Positions 26,326 through 37,187 of a DNA stretch of 64,000 nucleotides are shown one piece after another. The DNA is from Selaginella moellendorffii (lineage: Eukaryota > Plantae > Lycopodiophyta). The position numbers were made by a program, and so were the translations under genes. The notes under the pieces are model-generated. The model worked only from the letters and a program-made list of their open reading frames with translations. It did no database searches and was not told the origin of the DNA. Each line of letters starts with the position of its first letter. The first letter of the stretch is position 1. The stretch covers positions 4,146,880 through 4,210,879 of the forward strand of contig NW_003314261.1 of the NCBI RefSeq assembly GCF_000143415.4, given 5' to 3'.

Positions 26326-27945
26326 CTATTTGCCCAAGAAATCCCTCATGGGATCATCAAAGTGGACCTTCTTCATCTTGTACGCCTCCATATCCTCGGC
26401 CGTCACCTCGTCGCTGTAAGTCACATTATACTTCCTCTTGCGCTCGTCCTTCTCCTCGCGCAGCCGCTCGTCCTCCCTCTTGAGCGCCTCCTTGAGCTTC
26501 TTCCTGTCAAGCACAACGTCCTCCGCGACCTCTCCCCCCCAGCTCGCCAAGTTCTTCTCCTCAATCACCGGAGCTTTCTCCTGGACGGCCTCCTTCATCT
26601 CCATATTCGCTCGCATCAGCTCCGCCGACGCCTCCGCCGCGTCGATCCCCGCCTGGCCGGTGCAGTAGCTGTTCCTGATGAACTGCCGGCAGCACTTGTA
26701 TCCCCACTGGTGATCCCTCCAGAAGGACCCCCACACCGTGGTGTGGTTGTTTATGAACACGTCCTCCTCGTACTTGCTCTTCGGGACAGCCTTCTCCTGC
26801 CCCTTGATCATCCGCCCCGCTCGATCGTACTCCACCTGTCTCTCCGTCTGTCCGAGCAGGAGCTCCGCCGGGAGCTTGTCCGTGGCCGCGGCATTCCCAT
26901 ACTTCTCCATTATGTCCTCCTTGAGCTGCCCCTTGAGCTTCTCCTTCTTGACTTTGAAGTCCCGGTGGAGCAGCTCCGCCTGCGATGGAGCCGCCTGGAG
27001 ATGGATGTCCTGCCCCTTCTCGTAAGCCTCCCACGCGTGGATGTTGAGCTGCTTGAAGTCCTGCGCCTGGCCGCTGGCCCGGTTCTGGTTGTCGCCCATG
27101 TAGAACTTCTCGTTTGGATCGCTGTCCGGAAGGGGATCCTCTCGCATCGACCGCGTCTTGGGATCGTAGTAGGCCGAGTTCACGTCCAAGTTGAGGAGAT
27201 ACTTGGCAACGTCCTCCCTGATACGCAGGTTTCTCACAGTTCCAGTGCTGCCTCCTCCGGTGGTGCGCACTCGCTTCTCCACCTTTGCGAAGTCCATCTG
27301 CTTGCTCTCGTCCACCTTGGCCTCGTCCACCTCCGCCTCCTCGTCGCTGTCCGACTCGTCGCTGTCGCCAACTTTCTCTTTCTCATCCGGATTGTTTTGC
27401 TTCTGCTCCAGCTTCTTGAGCTGCTGCTCCTTCTGGTACTTGTTGCGCGCCTCGTCCTTCTGCTCCCAGTAGTTTATCACCATCGAGAACGTCTGCGGGT
27501 CGTAGCCGTTCCAGCGATCCCTCTTCCCATCGTAGTCCAGCTCGAAAGACTCCACTTTCTCGTCCGGGGCGATGTGTAAGTTGGACCACTTCGCCTGGAT
27601 CTTCCGGGGCCTGTCCATGCAGCTCTTGACATCGTGCGTTATCGCACCGCAGTTCTGGCAAGCCCCCTTTCGGAATTTGGTGGCCTGGAAGACCTTTGCT
27701 CCGCGCTCGTACCAGGCCTTGGTGTAGTTAGGGTCGGATTTCCACTTACGCTGATGCTTGAGACTGGGGCGCTCCGCGTTGAGGTACCACGGCGCCGAGG
27801 ACATGTACTGCGGGATGTGGGGATTGATCTCCTTCCCATCTTCGTCTACCTCTGCCGGAGCTAGCCCTGCCTTGCGCGCCTCCTCCAGCTCCATCTGCTT
27901 GCGGTGATCCTCGCGGGATTTGAAGGCCACGGACGCGGTCGCCAT
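26326..27945 (-). CDS. SLU7: Pre-mRNA splicing factor SLU7 (SMP1/SMP2-like), single exon
   Basis: MATASVAFKSREDHRKQMELEEARKAG; INPHIPQY; zinc knuckle CQNCGAITHDVKSC; RNLRIRED; DPKTRSMRE. Uninterrupted 539-aa ORF. Confidence 0.97.
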   Translation of the reverse strand: MATASVAFKSREDHRKQMELEEARKAGLAPAEVDEDGKEINPHIPQYMSSAPWYLNAERPSLKHQRKWKSDPNYTKAWYERGAKVFQATKFRKGACQNCGAITHDVKSCMDRPRKIQAKWSNLHIAPDEKVESFELDYDGKRDRWNGYDPQTFSMVINYWEQKDEARNKYQKEQQLKKLEQKQNNPDEKEKVGDSDESDSDEEAEVDEAKVDESKQMDFAKVEKRVRTTGGGSTGTVRNLRIREDVAKYLLNLDVNSAYYDPKTRSMREDPLPDSDPNEKFYMGDNQNRASGQAQDFKQLNIHAWEAYEKGQDIHLQAAPSQAELLHRDFKVKKEKLKGQLKEDIMEKYGNAAATDKLPAELLLGQTERQVEYDRAGRMIKGQEKAVPKSKYEEDVFINNHTTVWGSFWRDHQWGYKCCRQFIRNSYCTGQAGIDAAEASAELMRANMEMKEAVQEKAPVIEEKNLASWGGEVAEDVVLDRKKLKEALKREDERLREEKDERKRKYNVTYSDEVTAEDMEAYKMKKVHFDDPMRDFLGK

Positions 27946-30325: not shown

Positions 30326-30995
30326 TCACGCTGAGGCTTTAGCTTTACTCGATTGCAAGCGTTGCTGCAACTTTAGAACCTGGAAGACGAGAGAAAAAAA
30401 AAGGAGTTTGATTGGAAAAGAAAACGAGAAGAACAAAGATTTTGCAATGCTCTACCTCTTCTCTTTTGGAGCCTTGTTGATCCTCTAGGCTTTTCAATGA
30501 TCCGTCAAGTCTCCTCCTATGAGGAAAAGAAAAGAGAAAAGAAAAAGTGAGAAGAAAGCTCCGAGCTATGGAGGATGTGCTTGGACTGACAGTTCTCCTG
30601 TGATATACTCGATGCGCTTGTTCACGTTGGCCTTGGCTTCCACCAGGTCTTGCTTCACGAGCACTGGTCCAATGAGCTTAAACACATTGGCGTCCTCTTT
30701 GAGAAGCTCTAGTTCCTGGGAAGCATGATTCACGAGAAGAAACTTTCAAGTTCTAGAAGAGAAATGCGATTCCTAGGCACGGACCTTGATCACCATCTCA
30801 TTCTCCCCTTGCTGGATCGTGTACTGCCGCCTCACTTGGTGATTCTTGCTAATGTCTGTATCGCCCGATCGGTCTTGTTAGAGCTGGAATCCCTGCAACA
30901 ATCGCGATCGCGATCGCCATACCTTTCTGGATCTTGTTGAGCTCCGACGCTCGCAATTCCAGCTGCCGCTGGAGCTCCTTCACCGCGGCCGCCAT
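30326..30995 (-). CDS. PFD6: Prefoldin subunit 6, multi-exon
   Basis: MAAAVKELQRQLE...DISKNHQVRRQYTIQQGENEMVIK|ELELLKEDANVFKLIGPVLVKQDLVEAKANVNKRIEYI. Confidence 0.93.
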
Positions 30996-31355
30996 GCGAT
31001 TCTCTTCTCCAAGAACTCTGGAGCCCTAAAATATGTTCCCAGGATTTTAGGGTTCTTGGATCTCTTCTCTGGGCTGGAGTGCAGCGCTTCAATCCGGCTC
31101 GACGCGGATTCCATGACCGCATTATAGGTAAGCGCGCTCCAGATCTTCTCTCCCGGCGCCAAGAAGAATGGCATTGCCGCCTTCCGGGAGCCTCTGGACT
31201 GCGACGAGCAGCGTCTTCGCGTGGCAAATCCAGCAACAAACGGAATTCTGCGCGGAATTTCACGACTGGTAGCAGCAGCAAAGATCCCTCTTCTTCTCCG
31301 ATCGATCGATCAGGGAAGAAGAATCAAGAACAAGAAAATATTTTCTCTCGGCCCA

Positions 31356-34066
31356 ATGGAGGAGGTGCTGCGCGCGCCGTCCTTCCTCATTGACGACGGG
31401 CTGTGGAACAAGCTCAACACGGAGCTCCGCGCGGCGTGTCACTGGTGCACGCACCACCACACCACCACTCCAGCCGAGGCGGCCAAGCAGCTGGAGCGTG
31501 GTGAGGGCTGGCCTCGCGACTGGATCTCCAGGAAGGTGAAGAACTCCACCCGGCAATTCGGCGGCCTCTTCATCTGCCCGGCGCCCGACTGCTCGGGCCA
31601 CTCCAACACCAAGGGGGAGCGCCGGAGGCGGTGGTTTTGCCGGTTTTGCATCAATCGCCACCTCAACGTGGATCTCAAGAGCTTCTTCCAGCTTGACGAG
31701 ATCCAGGGGAAGTGGATCCAGATACCAAATCTCTACTGCTGGCACTGCCGAGCCAAGACCGGGGAGGCGATGTGCGTGAATTGTCCACAGAAGAACGCCA
31801 AGAGGCCCAAGCGCGCGAGGGACTCGTCCGCCACCACTGCTCTTGGGCTGCCCCGGACCTTGCTCGCGTCTCCACAGCTCGGGAATGGGATGGCCATGCT
31901 CGGAGGATCCGGGGACGTGCACTACGATGGAGTGAATGGTGATGCCAAGCAGCCGGAAGGTGTCGATGTGGATGAAAGTAGCTTCCAGGCCGAGGTTCAC
32001 CCAAACTTGGCGCTCTCGCAGCCGACTCCCACCATGGCCGATCTTCGCTTCTTGGCTGGCGCTGGGCCGAGCCATCAGAGAGGTTTTTTTCCGGAAAAGG
32101 CAGGTATTGTTTCGCGACTGGATCTTGTTTCTTACTCACCTTGTTTTTTTTTTCTCCAGGCTCTCCTTGGTCGCGACGCGTTATCAGTTGTTCCAAATCT
32201 CATAGAGTTCTTGAACAACTCTACGACACCTTTTCATGCCACTTGTGAGAGCACCATCTGGTGACTTCGTGTAAGTTCTCTCCCGGTACTGATGCGGGGT
32301 TTTACTTATATCAGTGGAGGCAAGGAGGCATTTGCTGGAATCAGGCTTCCAGCAGCTGAACGAGTGTGAAGAGTGGGAGTTACAGCCAGGTGGTCGCTAT
32401 TTCTTCACGCGAAATATGTCCTCGATATTTGCTTTCGCCATTGGTCGGAAGTACGCATCTTCTTCTCATCTTTGTTCCTTTTCCATTTACTAATGCATGG
32501 CTTGATGTCAATGTGCAGGTATAAACCCGGTGGTGGCTTTCATGTATTGGCTGCTCATACAGATAGTCCCTGTCCAAAGCTTAAACCAGTATCTGCGGCT
32601 ACTAAAGGTGGTTTTCTACGTGTTAGAGTCCAAGCTTATGGGACTGGACTATGGAATACCTGGTTTGACAGGGATTTAAGTGTCGCCGGGCGGGTTTTAC
32701 GTAGAACAAAAAATGGAGAGCTTATTCATGATCTTGTTCGTGTTCGAAGGCCAATATTGCGGATCCCGAGTTTGGCGTTTCATATGGACAGGTCTGTCTC
32801 GCCTTTCTTGACACTCTTGCTCAAACTATTTTCTCTACAGGTCAGACAGTATGAAGCAAGATTTGGAGTCCCAACTAGCTCCAGTCCTTGCTACTCAAAT
32901 TGAAGCAGAACTGGCTGTTTCTTGTGACTCGGAGTCGCCGGGTGAACATGAAGGAAACCAAAGCAACGACGTCCACCACCCTCTTCTTTTGCAGGTAACT
33001 CTTTGCCCTGGCATTCAGCCAGTCACACTTTTTCAGGTGCTCGCAGACGAGCTTCACTGCGATGTCAGTGAAATCGCGGATTTTGAGCTGAGCATTTACG
33101 ACACTCAGCCTGCATGCATCGGAGGTGCTCGTCAAGAGTTTGTGTTTTCGGGAAGGCTGGACAACCTGGCGTCGGCGTTCTGCGCTCTCTGGGCTCTGCT
33201 GGATACGTCTTCTGAACCGCTGTCGATGCTGGATGAGGATTACATCCGCATGGTTGCACTTTTCGACAATGGAGAGGTATTGTTTTTGTAATTTGTTTTT
33301 TCGAACTTTGACTTTACATGGGAGATTTCAGGTTGGATCAGAAGCCGTTCAAGGAGCTGGTCCACAGACCATGTTCCAGGCCATGATGAGGATATCACGA
33401 TGGCTGGCTCGCGGTTCTACAAGCGAAGGCGTTGTAGAGCGAGCAATCCGACGCTCGTTTGTTGGTACGCATCATACAGAGTCTGAGGAAGGATTGTGTT
33501 TAACTTTTTGTTCTTTTCTTTTCCTTGTGTTGTGTGGCAGTATCTGCAGACATGGCTCATGCTTTGCATCCCAACAATGCCGAGAATGATGTGGAGCACA
33601 ACCAGCCAAAACTCCACGACGGTCTCGTAATCAAACACAATGTAACACAGAACAATGCGACAGACGCGATCTCTGCGTTTCTGTTCAAGGAGGTCGCCAA
33701 GCGGAATTGTATTCCGACACAGGTCAGCCTCGACTCGTCCACGCTCTGTGTCTCTCATTTTTAACGCTTTCTCTTGCGCGCAGAACTATTCCGTGGTCAG
33801 TGACGTTGGATGCTGCTCGACCATCGATTCAGTGCTGGCGGCAGGATATGGCATCCGTTTGGTGGATTGCGGTCTTCCACAGCTCGCGATGCACAGGTTT
33901 GCTCCATGATTGGGAATTATATCTTTCGCGCTGGCTGACTCTCTGGGGGCTTTGCAGCGTGCGAGAGATGTGCGGCACGGAAGATATTGACGCCGCCTTC
34001 CGCCACTTCCGAGCTTTCTTCCAAGAGATCGCTTCTCTCGACGATCAGCTCCGAGTGGACGCCTGA
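31356..34066 (+). CDS. M18 aspartyl aminopeptidase-like protein (probably catalytically impaired) with an N-terminal Cys-rich zf-4CXXC_R1-like domain and NLS
   Basis: Open frame from ATG 31356 through CHWC/CPAPDC/FCRFC/YCWHC/CVNC and KRPKRAR into LIEFLNNSTTPFHAT. Then YFFTRN, AHTDSP, LWNTWFDRDLSVAGRV, SGRLDNL, FDNGE|VGS, SADMAH, QLAMH|SVREMCG. The peptidase call is firm. The fusion is inferred, and there is an alternative in-frame ATG at 32034. Confidence 0.8.
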
Positions 34067-34510
34067 GAAATAGCCGGCGAGACGTACCAACGTGGGACGC
34101 CATCATCATTCTCAGCTTCTTGAGAGGTAAAAAAAAACTCTTCCTCTCTCCGAAACTCCGAGCGTTTCTCTTTTTTTTTCTTTCTCGTCTTTCGTCTTTC
34201 GTCTCTCTTTTTCTCACCATAGTCGTCTTTCTCTCCACATAAGCTGTGTACTACTGATAAGCGTCACAGGTATGACATAAGCATGGCCGTTAGCTATGCG
34301 CTTGTCATGTCCTTACACGATTCTTTTCCTCTCTTTTTGCTCTCACTCCGGCCTGGCGTCCTTGTGATTCTTCCGTATGTCTACTCCTGACGCAAGACTG
34401 GACGACAAAGTGTAACGCGCAGAGACGCGACGCGAGCATTCGTCCAGCCTCTGTCGCAAGGACTCGTCCAAGCTAAGCATCTCGAGCTTGCTACAGGGAT
34501 AACCGCGCAA

Positions 34511-35935: not shown

Positions 35936-37187
35936 ATGGGAAGGCAGCCATGCTGTGAGAAAGTAGGACTTAAAAAGGGGCCATGGACTGCAGAGGAGGA
36001 CAGGAAGCTCATACACTACATCACCAGCCATGGGCACGGATGCTGGCGTGCAGTTCCTAAGCTAGCTGGTAAGCAAAGAAGGCATTGCCAAGAGAAAAAG
36101 GAACAAAACCTTACCTCTTTGTAGTTGAATTGATCGATCTCTCATCTCTCACTCGACGAAATTCGCAGGACTCCTACGCTGCGGAAAGAGCTGCCGCTTG
36201 CGGTGGACGAATTATCTCCGCCCCGATCTCAAACGCGGTGTTCTCACGGAGCAAGAGGAGCAGATGATCATCGATCTGCACGCTGTCATGGGAAACAGGT
36301 ACCATCTATCAGGAGAAATCCAAAAACGAGCTTTGGAAAGCATAGTCACCGGTTGGCATGAAATTTTGTGTCTCAGGTGGTCTCGCATTGCGGCACAGCT
36401 CCCCGGCCGGACGGACAACGAGATCAAAAACTACTGGAACACCAGGATCAAGAAGAAGCTCCGGCAGATGGGGATCGATCCAATGACTCATCAGGCCATC
36501 AGCAGCAGCACCGCCAGCGGCCTGAGCTGCGTCACCGAGGAGGCGTCGCAGGCGGCGTCGCCATCCTCGTCCACACCTGCGACCATCCAATTCACCAGCA
36601 GTCAGCAAGCGCAGGAGAACTTAGCGGAGACCATGATGAACCTGCTCGTCCAGGAGATGCCAGGCGCTGACACCTCCGCTCACGAGTATCTGGTCGTGCC
36701 ACCCTCCTCGTCCGCTTCCTCTTCTTCTTCCTCCGGGAGTTCCTGGCAGCAACTGGCAATGCTCATGCCTCCCCCTCGCTTCCCGCAGCCAGAGGCCGCA
36801 GCACAGCTCCCGTGCTGTCTCCAAAAGCAGGAGACGGACTCCAGCGAGCAGCAGCAGCAGCAGCAGCAGCAATCCACGAGTACGACTGTTGCATGCGTGA
36901 AGCGGGAAGTGTCATCGTCGCCGTCCCTGTGGGAGATCATCAACGGCCCCAGCAGCTTCCTCGACGACGAGTCGGCCTGCTCGCCGAGTTACTTCCAGCA
37001 ATGGAGCCACCCTGGTGCTGCTCAGCACCCCGTGACCGTTGCCAATGCCTCCAGTTCACATGATCCCTGGCGTTCGCACCCAGCTTTTGTTGAAAGCCAG
37101 CACCAGCCTCAAGAGGAAGGCGTCCGCTACCCACACTCTTGCCAAGAGGAGCTCCAGAGGCTGGCTGCCATCCTCGATGACATGTAA
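35936..37187 (+). CDS. R2R3-MYB transcription factor (exons 35936-36068, 36169-36298, 36377-37187)
   Basis: [22 protein letters not shown]; [24 protein letters not shown]; [28 protein letters not shown]; GIDPMTH motif; poly-Q encoded by (CAG)n at about 36849-36872. Confidence 0.97.

What the first reader, a model, noticed from the sequence alone, without database searches (positions are those of the whole stretch)
31356..34066. Chromatin-type zinc finger and NLS fused to an M18 aminopeptidase: candidate undescribed nuclear scaffold
Seen: one stop-free frame runs from ATG 31356 through C-H-W-C, C-PAPD-C, F-C-RF-C-INRH, W..Y-C-WH-C-R, C-VN-C, a basic KNAKRPKRAR and a low-complexity linker, straight into the M18 N-terminus (LIEFLNNSTTPFHA). 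In-frame splicing options exist in the linker (GC-AG 32100-32159, GT-AG 32104-32187). Known: this Cys order resembles zf-4CXXC_R1 of CDCA7 and plant KDM3/JMJ proteins (CHQC...C..C...FCxxCLxNRY...WxCPxCR..CxCxxC), and M18 aspartyl aminopeptidases form dodecameric cages. The finger is divergent: it lacks the RQK after the first CxxC and one terminal Cys. The peptidase half looks closest to the plastid-type plant paralog. Inference: a transit peptide was replaced by a nuclear reader module, which a cage could display multivalently. I know of no description of this architecture.
Basis: partly seen in the sequence, partly recalled or inferred. Interest (0 to 1): 0.85.

Follow-up and report, generated by a model that had tools for sequence, protein, structure and literature searches.

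The report
Zinc module fused to dead aminopeptidase
This is a real, expressed spikemoss gene, found otherwise only in clubmosses and mosses, that joins an almost invariant cysteine-rich (probably zinc-binding) module to a cage-forming M18 aminopeptidase lacking its catalytic glutamate; databases list it but nobody has studied it, and its proposed link to chromatin is unproven.

Summary
Spliced transcript contigs from four studies join ATG 31356 to stop 34066. The linker intron is the 60-nt, in-frame GC-AG intron 32100-32159. The product is 722 aa and matches the RefSeq Selaginella moellendorffii "probable aspartyl aminopeptidase" except at two allelic residues.

Orthologous fusions are annotated in Physcomitrium (750 aa) and Diphasiastrum (682 aa). 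Sphagnum-type loci have the same layout, and one moss mRNA contig uses the same GC-AG junction. Nothing comparable turned up in seed plants.

The Cys-rich module is the most constrained part: 86-88% identity between spikemoss and moss, no indels, dN/dS about 0.05. Ten Cys and two His are conserved, enough for three zinc sites.

The M18 half belongs to the DAP2-type lineage. It keeps the metal ligands, but every clade member has the catalytic Glu replaced by Gly or Ser, plus changes at positions invariant in canonical enzymes. It is therefore probably a pseudo-peptidase scaffold.

The chromatin (zf-4CXXC_R1) reading is not established. There is no Pfam, PDB-profile or fold match. Only the order of the Cys motifs resembles CDCA7. 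Nuclear location rests on a conserved KRxKR patch alone.

This scan found the same gene before on another piece of this genome (s1-358620). My independent tests agree with that note.

The parts
31093..31355 (+). 5' leader of the mRNA, with two short upstream ORFs (ATG 31113, 4 aa; ATG 31168, 34 aa)
   Evidence: Contigs of three runs begin at 31093-31114 (table 8). uATGs listed.
31356..31790 (+). Cys/His-rich module, aa 1-145. Ten conserved Cys (28, 31, 74, 79, 95, 98, 128, 131, 140, 143) plus invariant His29 and His130. Probably binds three zinc ions.
   Evidence: 86-88% identity to Physcomitrium and Diphasiastrum with no indels. dN/dS about 0.05. No Pfam, PDB or fold match.
31791..31820 (+). 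Basic patch KNAKRPKRAR (aa 146-155), similar to a monopartite NLS
   Evidence: The KR.KR core is kept in all orthologues. Its function was not tested.
31821..32099 (+). Low-complexity linker (aa 156-248) with conserved islands (YDG, DES.F, DLRF, FF.EK)
   Evidence: 32-40% identity, with indels in whole codons only and the frame kept open in all species. Met 32034 is not conserved in orthologues.
32100..32159 (+). Intron 1: GC-AG, 60 nt, phase 0, in frame. It joins the linker to the M18 domain.
   Evidence: A 60-nt skip appears in all four runs. GC..AG is the only canonical placement. The same GC-AG phase-0 position is shown by mRNA versus gene in a moss (L006 vs L013) and fits L001 and L003.
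32160..34066 (+). M18 aminopeptidase domain (aa 249-722) in nine exons: 32160-32244, 32315-32450, 32519-32791, 32841-32994, 33037-33276, 33332-33464, 33541-33722, 33784-33896, 33958-34066 (stop TGA 34064-34066)
   Evidence: Splice joints. Model. Pfam Peptidase_M18 1.4e-132 over 1-432/432 on the allelic RefSeq protein. Matches human DNPEP 4dyo at 3.8e-122.
33271..33273 (+). GGA, Gly543, in the place of the catalytic general-base Glu (DNEE becomes DNGE)
   Evidence: Alignments to 4dyo, 3var and 7u5h. No RNA contig differs here. Every clade member has G or S at this position, against E in about 109 of 110 other M18 sequences (the odd one is a gapped row).
34067..34215 (+). 3' untranslated region
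   Evidence: Contigs extend to 34128-34215 (table 8).

Best explanation
One gene, one mRNA and one 722-aa protein. It has four parts: an N-terminal 145-aa Cys/His module under extreme constraint, a conserved basic patch, a flexible linker, and a complete M18 (DAP2-type) aminopeptidase fold. Shown: the in-frame splicing, the conservation of the fusion in mosses and lycophytes, the loss of the catalytic Glu, and the change of several residues that are invariant in canonical enzymes, while the five metal ligands are kept. Inferred: the M18 half no longer cleaves peptides and instead serves as an oligomerisation scaffold. Solved M18 enzymes are tetrahedral dodecamers with surface-exposed N-terminal tails, so such a scaffold would display up to twelve copies of the module. 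The module would be the working part and would bind some very conserved partner. The lack of a presequence and the KRxKR patch suggest a cytosolic or nuclear location. My confidences: real fusion 0.95; module binds zinc 0.8; no canonical peptidase activity 0.75; scaffold or display role 0.55.
For: Each of four transcript assemblies carries finger, linker and M18 exons joined by the in-frame GC-AG intron. The model equals the RefSeq 722-aa protein apart from two allelic residues, and both alleles appear in RNA. Annotated fusions exist in Physcomitrium (750 aa) and Diphasiastrum (682 aa). All 11 related loci with enough downstream DNA carry M18 exons on the same strand. A moss mRNA contig (L006) matches its gene (L013) and uses the same GC-AG junction. 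The finger is 86-88% identical with no indels, against 65-74% for M18 and 32-40% for the linker. Finger dN/dS is about 0.05. Ten Cys and two His are conserved across about 18 distinct sequences. Catalytic EE reads GE or SE in every clade member, and R626, Y627, N655, G660 and G664 are also replaced, yet 194 of 235 canonical-invariant columns are kept. The clade has full support and a long stem (0.57) inside the land-plant DAP2-type group. M18 enzymes are tetrahedral dodecamers, and in Ape4 twelve ZZ modules bind its N-terminal tail from outside (bioRxiv 10.1101/2021.02.07.430097).
Against: No activity, assembly or localisation data exist. All metal ligands remain, so residual or altered catalysis, or binding of peptide N-termini without cleavage, is possible. 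Mosses have also lost the His of the AIHLDR loop, which reaches into the neighbouring subunit's active site in canonical enzymes, so the oligomer contacts may have drifted. RNA evidence comes from assembled contigs, which cannot exclude minor isoforms such as transcripts without the finger. RefSeq predicts a Physcomitrium isoform of a paralogue that starts inside the linker. The fold of the module is unknown.
Confidence: 0.6

Rival explanations
1. One reading: the module is a divergent CDCA7/KDM3-type zf-4CXXC_R1 chromatin or DNA reader, and the protein is a nuclear scaffold that displays it multivalently.
For: The order of the Cys motifs (CXXC, CX4C, CXXC, CXXC, CXXC) follows the published CDCA7 signature CXXC-X10-C-X4-C-X7-CXXC-X19-CXXC-X3-C-X-CXXC. 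A conserved basic KRxKR patch follows the module. A language-model search gave weak leads (score 0.83) to a red-algal cluster in which half the members carry zf-4CXXC_R1, and to PHD fingers. The extreme conservation would suit a nucleic-acid or histone partner.
Against: No member hits PF10497 at E<=10. The family profile hits no PDB sequence. There are 10 Cys rather than 11, and the spacers are 42/15/29/8 against 10/7/19/3. The atlas score of 0.83 is within the range that shuffled proteins reach a third of the time. Searches from two other family members gave no usable hit. There are no localisation data.
Confidence: 0.2
2. The protein is still a working, or hetero-oligomeric, aminopeptidase. 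The module would be a regulatory or targeting appendage, or the dead subunits would co-assemble with active DAP2 subunits and carry them to a new place.
For: All five metal ligands and 194 of 235 invariant columns are kept. Selaginella, Diphasiastrum, Physcomitrium and Sphagnum each also have a canonical DAP2-type gene.
Against: The general-base Glu is missing in every member, as are other invariant residues (R, Y, N and two G). The long stem branch points to a change of function. The canonical paralogues carry presequence-like N-termini, which suggests a different compartment.
Confidence: 0.15
3. The module is a protein-protein adaptor unrelated to chromatin. For example, it could tie an M18 cage to a selective-autophagy or vacuolar-targeting route, or to another conserved complex. 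M18 cages are classic cargos of such routes in yeasts.
For: Ape1 and Ape4 are receptor-bound cargos, and a zinc (ZZ) domain binds the Ape4 N-terminus. The linker carries an acidic YDGV motif in Selaginella and in mosses that resembles an Atg8-interacting motif.
Against: The motif reads YDGA in Diphasiastrum and FQSA in L003, so it is not conserved. The module does not hit the ZZ family in Pfam. There is no experimental hint.
Confidence: 0.1
4. The fusion is only apparent: there are two products, or the finger ORF is an untranslated leader and the peptidase starts at ATG 32034.
For: ATG 32034 sits in a good context (caccATGg). Two uORFs show a complex leader. Early Selaginella models of M18 genes had 477 and 519 aa and no finger (PMC5638241).
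Against: Strong purifying selection on the finger at the protein level. The frame is kept open through the linker in all species, with whole-codon indels. Orthologues have no Met at the 32034 position. The phase-0 junction is conserved.
Confidence: 0.03

Closest known systems
Plant DAP2-type M18 aspartyl aminopeptidases (AtDAP2 At5g04710 and relatives; Park et al. 2017, PMC5638241)
   Same: Full-length Peptidase_M18 fold, 55-63% identity, the same metal ligands, and placement inside the land-plant DAP2-type group. The extra moss and clubmoss 'DAP2' paralogues in that paper probably include this clade, though I could not match the accessions.
   Different: The catalytic Glu is replaced by Gly or Ser. 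NQRY reads TQNN or is deleted. GCGSTIG reads GCCSTxx. RND reads VSD or xxR. The stem branch is long. The N-terminal presequence is replaced by the 145-aa Cys module, a basic patch and a linker. The paper mentions neither the module nor the lost Glu.
zf-4CXXC_R1 of CDCA7 and plant IBM1/JMJ proteins (PF10497)
   Same: About three predicted zinc sites built from CXXC pairs, in the same order of motif types, with a CX4C in second place.
   Different: No profile hit. Ten Cys rather than eleven. All four spacers are much longer, including a 42-residue invariant insert. The ICF-associated residues cannot be aligned. No structural support.
Yeast M18 cages with N-terminal interaction elements (S. cerevisiae Ape1 propeptide; S. 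pombe Ape4 bound by Nbr1 ZZ1, PDB 7dde)
   Same: An M18 dodecamer whose exposed N-terminus carries or receives an interaction module. 7dde is an engineered M18-zinc-finger fusion.
   Different: Those enzymes are active. The zinc domain there belongs to a separate receptor protein and is of the ZZ type, which is unrelated by sequence to this module.

Membership tests
Peptidase M18 (PF02127) | Full-length match to the family profile | tested here: met
   P0016 (the allele of the window's protein) scores 1.4e-132 over profile positions 1-432 of 432. It matches human DNPEP 4dyo at 3.8e-122.
Peptidase M18 (PF02127) | Five co-catalytic metal ligands (His in HTDSP, Asp in RLDN, second Glu of EE, Asp in SADM, His in MHS) | tested here: met
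   The motifs read AHTDSP, GRLDNL, (G)E, SADMAH and LAMHSV.
Peptidase M18 (PF02127) | Catalytic general-base Glu (first Glu of the EE pair) | tested here: not met
   Gly543 (GGA, 33271-33273). G or S in all clade members, E in about 109 of 110 other sequences; the exception is a gapped row.
Peptidase M18 (PF02127) | Tetrahedral homo-dodecamer | not testable with these tools
   Inferred only from retention of 194 of 235 invariant columns and from solved relatives.
Land-plant DAP2-type lineage | Groups with DAP2-type sequences in a tree | tested here: met
   The clade lies inside the land-plant group that holds the canonical 520-590-aa proteins, including Brassica (527 aa) and the Selaginella 556-aa protein with a presequence. 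No DAP1 sequences were in the tree, so the DAP1/DAP2 split itself was not tested.
zf-4CXXC_R1 (PF10497, CDCA7 type) | Match to the family profile | tested here: not met
   No hit at E<=10 for the window's module or for any of 9 family members or the full proteins. HMMER's filters may hide very weak hits.
zf-4CXXC_R1 (PF10497, CDCA7 type) | Eleven signature Cys arranged as CXXC-X10-C-X4-C-X7-CXXC-X19-CXXC-X3-C-X-CXXC (bioRxiv 10.1101/2023.01.30.526367) | tested here: not met
   Here the arrangement is CXXC-X42-C-X4-C-X15-CXXC-X29-CXXC-X8-CXXC. The order of motif types is the same, but there are ten Cys and all spacers are longer.
zf-4CXXC_R1 (PF10497, CDCA7 type) | ICF-associated residues (R274, G294, R304 of human CDCA7) for class I | tested here: inconclusive
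   No alignment to a CDCA7 sequence could be obtained with these tools.
zf-4CXXC_R1 (PF10497, CDCA7 type) | Fold shared with solved CDCA7 zinc-finger structures | tested here: inconclusive
   The models have pLDDT 41 and 55. No match came from Foldseek PDB, VIA-align wide or the atlas.
Classical monopartite NLS | K-(K/R)-X-(K/R) core in an exposed region | tested here: met
   KRPKRAR, with the KR.KR core kept in orthologues. Whether it drives import cannot be tested here.

The most novel reading that the evidence does not exclude
The module is a new, deeply diverged relative of the CDCA7 hemimethylated-DNA-sensing zinc finger. A catalytically dead M18 dodecamer displays twelve copies of it as a multivalent nuclear chromatin-binding particle. 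This would be a type of chromatin scaffold that existed in the first land plants and was lost in the seed-plant line.
Probability: 0.12. Interest if true: 0.8.

Novelty: new variant of a known kind. Interest (0 to 1): 0.55.

Why it matters
This is a clear natural case of a metallopeptidase cage turned into a probable non-enzymatic scaffold by losing its catalytic base and gaining a new domain. The added 145-aa module has no family assignment, yet 53 consecutive residues are identical between spikemoss, clubmoss and moss sequences. That level of constraint is typical of core chromatin or translation proteins and implies an important, unknown partner. The gene is present in the model moss Physcomitrium, so knock-out, tagging and structural work are directly feasible. 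It also shows that the 'extra DAP2 paralogues' of non-seed plants are probably not ordinary aminopeptidases.

Tried and rejected
- **Pfam on the module.** I scanned the 302-aa ORF, nine family members and the full proteins. There were no meaningful hits. The best were Ephrin_rec_like (0.026) and PSI (0.08), which I take as Cys-composition noise.
- **Family profile against PDB sequences.** No hit at E<=10.
- **AlphaFold.** Single sequence gave pLDDT 41. A 9-row alignment gave pLDDT 55. Both are too poor to interpret.
- **Fold searches.** Foldseek PDB, VIA-align wide and the atlas gave nothing.
- **Protein-atlas feature search.** Leads reached only 0.83 for the window's module, and there was no usable hit for P0005 or P0013.
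- **Distant homologues P0012 and P0013** (33-36% identity, Logan run SRR17405563). Their contigs are under 1.8 kb and show no M18 downstream. The organism is unknown, so it stays open whether the module exists apart from M18.
- **Chlorokybus 997-aa protein.** It is a tandem M18 model without the module.
- **First attempt at an M18 query from L001** failed because the called gene does not translate stop-free. The L006 ORF solved this.
- **Alternative start in another frame.** I considered an M18 start at ATG 31936 in frame +1 joined by the 56-nt GT-AG splice, which would give a transit-peptide-like leader. I rejected it because all four RNA assemblies show the 60-nt splice, and because the frame-0 linker is conserved in other species.
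- **Atg8-interacting motif in the linker.** Not conserved in lycophytes.
Full report
**1. Observation**

The window holds a stop-free frame from ATG 31356 to 32264.

I laid contigs from four public runs, belonging to four studies, on 30700-34500. The contigs lack nine short stretches, eight of which have GT..AG ends, so they derive from spliced RNA. In each run one contig, or two overlapping contigs, covers 31093/31114 through the finger, the linker and the M18 exons to beyond the stop.

The joint in the linker skips 60 nt in all four runs. The only canonical placement is GC..AG at 32100-32159, which is in frame. The spliced CDS 31356-34066 gives 722 aa. Contigs cannot exclude minor isoforms.

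**2. The gene is annotated and is Selaginella**

A search with a full-length moss ORF (see section 3) returned RefSeq [quoted passage not shown], 722 aa. It is identical to my model except for D156E and V623L. Both differences appear as alternative letters in the RNA contigs, at 31823 C/G and 33642 G/C. The window is therefore the other allele or haplotype, and both are expressed.

I re-tested its claims independently and they hold.

**3. The fusion is conserved**

- *Exhaustive search.* A phmmer search of the module against 1.84 billion cluster representatives found only eight proteins. Five are 76-85% identical, one is a fragment, and two are distant (33-36% identity) and come from one unidentified Logan run.
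- *Named full-length fusions.* They exist for Physcomitrium patens (750 aa), Diphasiastrum complanatum (682 aa) and Selaginella.
- *Truncated clade members.* These come from Sphagnum and Physcomitrium and begin inside the linker or the module.
- *Sphagnum host DNA.* The module-encoding ORFs P0001 and P0005 lie on contigs L003 and L001/L002, with Peptidase_M18 ORFs just downstream on the same strand. ERZ12295333, the source of L001, is a Sphagnum microbiome assembly (PMC9584203).
- *Metagenome loci.* A metagenome scan gave 16 more loci. Every locus with enough downstream DNA (11 in all) has collinear M18 exons.
- *A moss mRNA.* L006 is an intronless contig with a single ORF running from the module through the linker into M18. 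It matches the intron-bearing locus L013 at 99.6-100% in exon blocks. It is therefore the mRNA of that moss gene.
- *The junction.* The L006/L013 junction is again a GC-AG, phase-0 intron directly after "..FFSEK". The same GC donor and phase fit L001 and L003.
- *The internal Met.* The Met at 32034 that could start a peptidase-only product is A or S in the orthologues.

No seed-plant, fern or liverwort protein carried the module in the searches made.

**4. Which part is constrained**

| Region (Selaginella vs Physcomitrium, Diphasiastrum, L006) | Identity | Indels |
|---|---|---|
| Module core, aa 10-145 | 86-88% | none |
| M18 half | 65-74% | some rows gapped |
| Linker | 32-40% | whole codons only |

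A 53-residue stretch, ELRAACHWC...GGLFICP (aa 23-75), is identical in all four sequences.

Synonymous sites of the module are saturated (pS 0.68-0.90) while pN is 0.07-0.10. Where it can be measured, dN/dS is 0.04-0.06. The module is thus translated and is the most constrained part of the protein.

Across about 18 distinct sequences, ten Cys and His29 and His130 are kept. There are two exceptions. One species has C79Y. The two distant homologues place the last Cys pair differently, as C-X4-C. Twelve ligands fit three tetrahedral zinc sites; this is an inference.

**5. The peptidase half**

Pfam matches Peptidase_M18 end to end, and the closest solved structures are human and bovine DNPEP.

I aligned 121 sequences. 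The canonical DNEEV motif is present in 105 of them, and three variants that also keep both Glu (DHEEV, DTEEV and one more) bring the total with an intact EE pair to about 109 of the 110 sequences outside the clade. Every member of the module-bearing clade reads GE instead. The metagenome loci add IGE and SSE. In the window, Gly543 is the GGA codon at 33271-33273, and no RNA contig differs there.

Further positions that are at least 95% invariant in canonical enzymes are changed throughout the clade:

- R626 and Y627 of NQRY
- N655 of RND
- G660 and G664 of GCGSTIG
- W270

The five metal-ligand motifs are kept, and so are 194 of 235 invariant columns. Loss of the general-base Glu abolishes or cripples catalysis in co-catalytic metallopeptidases of this clan; that is established knowledge, not tested here.

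A maximum-likelihood tree places the 11 clade rows together with 100% SH-aLRT support on a long stem (0.57). Lycophytes and mosses form its two halves. The clade sits inside the land-plant DAP2-type group, next to the canonical moss, liverwort, lycophyte, fern and seed-plant proteins. The canonical Selaginella and Physcomitrium paralogues carry presequence-like N-termini.

The simplest history is a duplication in early land plants, followed by replacement of the presequence with the module, loss of catalysis, and later loss of the gene in other lineages. Park et al. 2017 (PMC5638241) noted extra DAP2 paralogues in moss and clubmoss. They used 477-519-aa models and mention neither the module nor the lost Glu.

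**6. What the module is**

- Pfam gives nothing for the window's module, the nine family members or the full proteins, even at E<=10.
- A profile of the family hits no PDB sequence.
- The AlphaFold models are poor (pLDDT 41 and 55) and no fold search gave a match.
- A language-model feature search gave only sub-threshold leads (0.83), to a cluster partly annotated zf-4CXXC_R1 and to PHD fingers.

The published CDCA7 signature is CXXC-X10-C-X4-C-X7-CXXC-X19-CXXC-X3-C-X-CXXC (bioRxiv 10.1101/2023.01.30.526367). The module reads CXXC-X42-C-X4-C-X15-CXXC-X29-CXXC-X8-CXXC. The number of Cys and every spacer differ. I treat a distant relationship as possible (about 0.2), not as shown. The module is best described as an unclassified, probably three-zinc domain.

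**7. Mechanism**

*Shown:* one mRNA, one conserved reading frame, a strongly selected module, and an M18 fold without its catalytic base.

*Inferred:* M18 enzymes with solved structures are tetrahedral dodecamers. In S. pombe Ape4 the N-terminal tail lies on the surface, where twelve Nbr1 ZZ domains bind it. An N-terminal module on a flexible linker of about 90 residues would therefore be displayed outside the particle in many copies. The protein would then work through what the module binds, not through peptide cleavage. The acidic N-terminus is unlike a presequence, and the conserved KR.KR patch suggests cytosolic or nuclear residence.

Rivals are listed with odds in the Rival explanations section: a CDCA7-like nuclear chromatin reader; a still-active or hetero-oligomeric peptidase with a targeting domain; an adaptor for autophagy-type trafficking; and two separate products (largely refuted).

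**8. Novelty and score**

The fusion is present in RefSeq models but is named only as an aspartyl aminopeptidase. I found no paper on the module, the fusion or the dead active site. The searched library covers open-access papers only.

I class it as a new variant of a known kind: an M18 pseudoenzyme with an unclassified, ultra-conserved domain, restricted to mosses and lycophytes. It is interesting and testable in Physcomitrium, but its function is unknown and the chromatin reading is unproven. Interest 0.55.

Read laying was given 3,801 letters.

Noticed in passing
window 30566-31100 (- strand): A prefoldin beta-type gene (PF01920 hit on the exon ORF 30566-30733) lies head to head with the finger-M18 gene. 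Its transcript has a minus-strand intron at 30856-30922. In one run its contig merges with the finger-M18 contig, so the two 5' ends overlap or abut, which suggests a shared bidirectional promoter.
   Followed up: partly
window 31113-31272: There are two upstream ORFs in the 5' leader of the finger-M18 mRNA: ATG 31113 (4 aa, in the main frame) and ATG 31168 (34 aa). They may affect translation.
   Followed up: no
window 31823 and 33642: Two non-synonymous allelic differences from the RefSeq copy (D156E, V623L) are both present in RNA contigs of different runs, so both haplotype alleles are expressed.
   Followed up: yes
window 26326-27945 (- strand): An intronless 539-aa ORF with a full Slu7 pre-mRNA splicing-factor domain (PF11708, 3.6e-94).
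   Followed up: partly
window 35936-36124 (+ strand): First exon of a Myb DNA-binding-domain gene (PF00249, 6.7e-11), downstream of the finger-M18 gene.
   Followed up: partly
L006 2853-3487 versus L013 8463-10141: The moss mRNA contig skips the two exons that encode the SADMAH and GCCST regions. This shifts the frame and ends the ORF at 646 aa. It is either an exon-skipped isoform or an assembly artefact.
   Followed up: partly
L004 269-1567 and L021 274-1239 (Logan run SRR17405563): Two distant homologues of the module (33-36% identity, same Cys order, extra inserts) lie on short contigs of an unidentified organism. They are followed by Pro/Arg-rich sequence and show no M18. The module may exist outside the fusion.
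   Followed up: partly
P0002 / P0009 (Logan contigs): One lineage has Tyr in place of Cys79 (the second Cys of CX4C) and His35Tyr, so that zinc site may be dispensable or rebuilt there.
   Followed up: no
moss clade members (P0014, P0018-P0021, P0038): Mosses, but not lycophytes, have also lost the His of the AIHLDR loop. In canonical M18 enzymes this His inserts into the neighbouring subunit's active site. The His of SADMAH is lost as well, so decay of the catalytic apparatus has gone further in mosses.
   Followed up: partly
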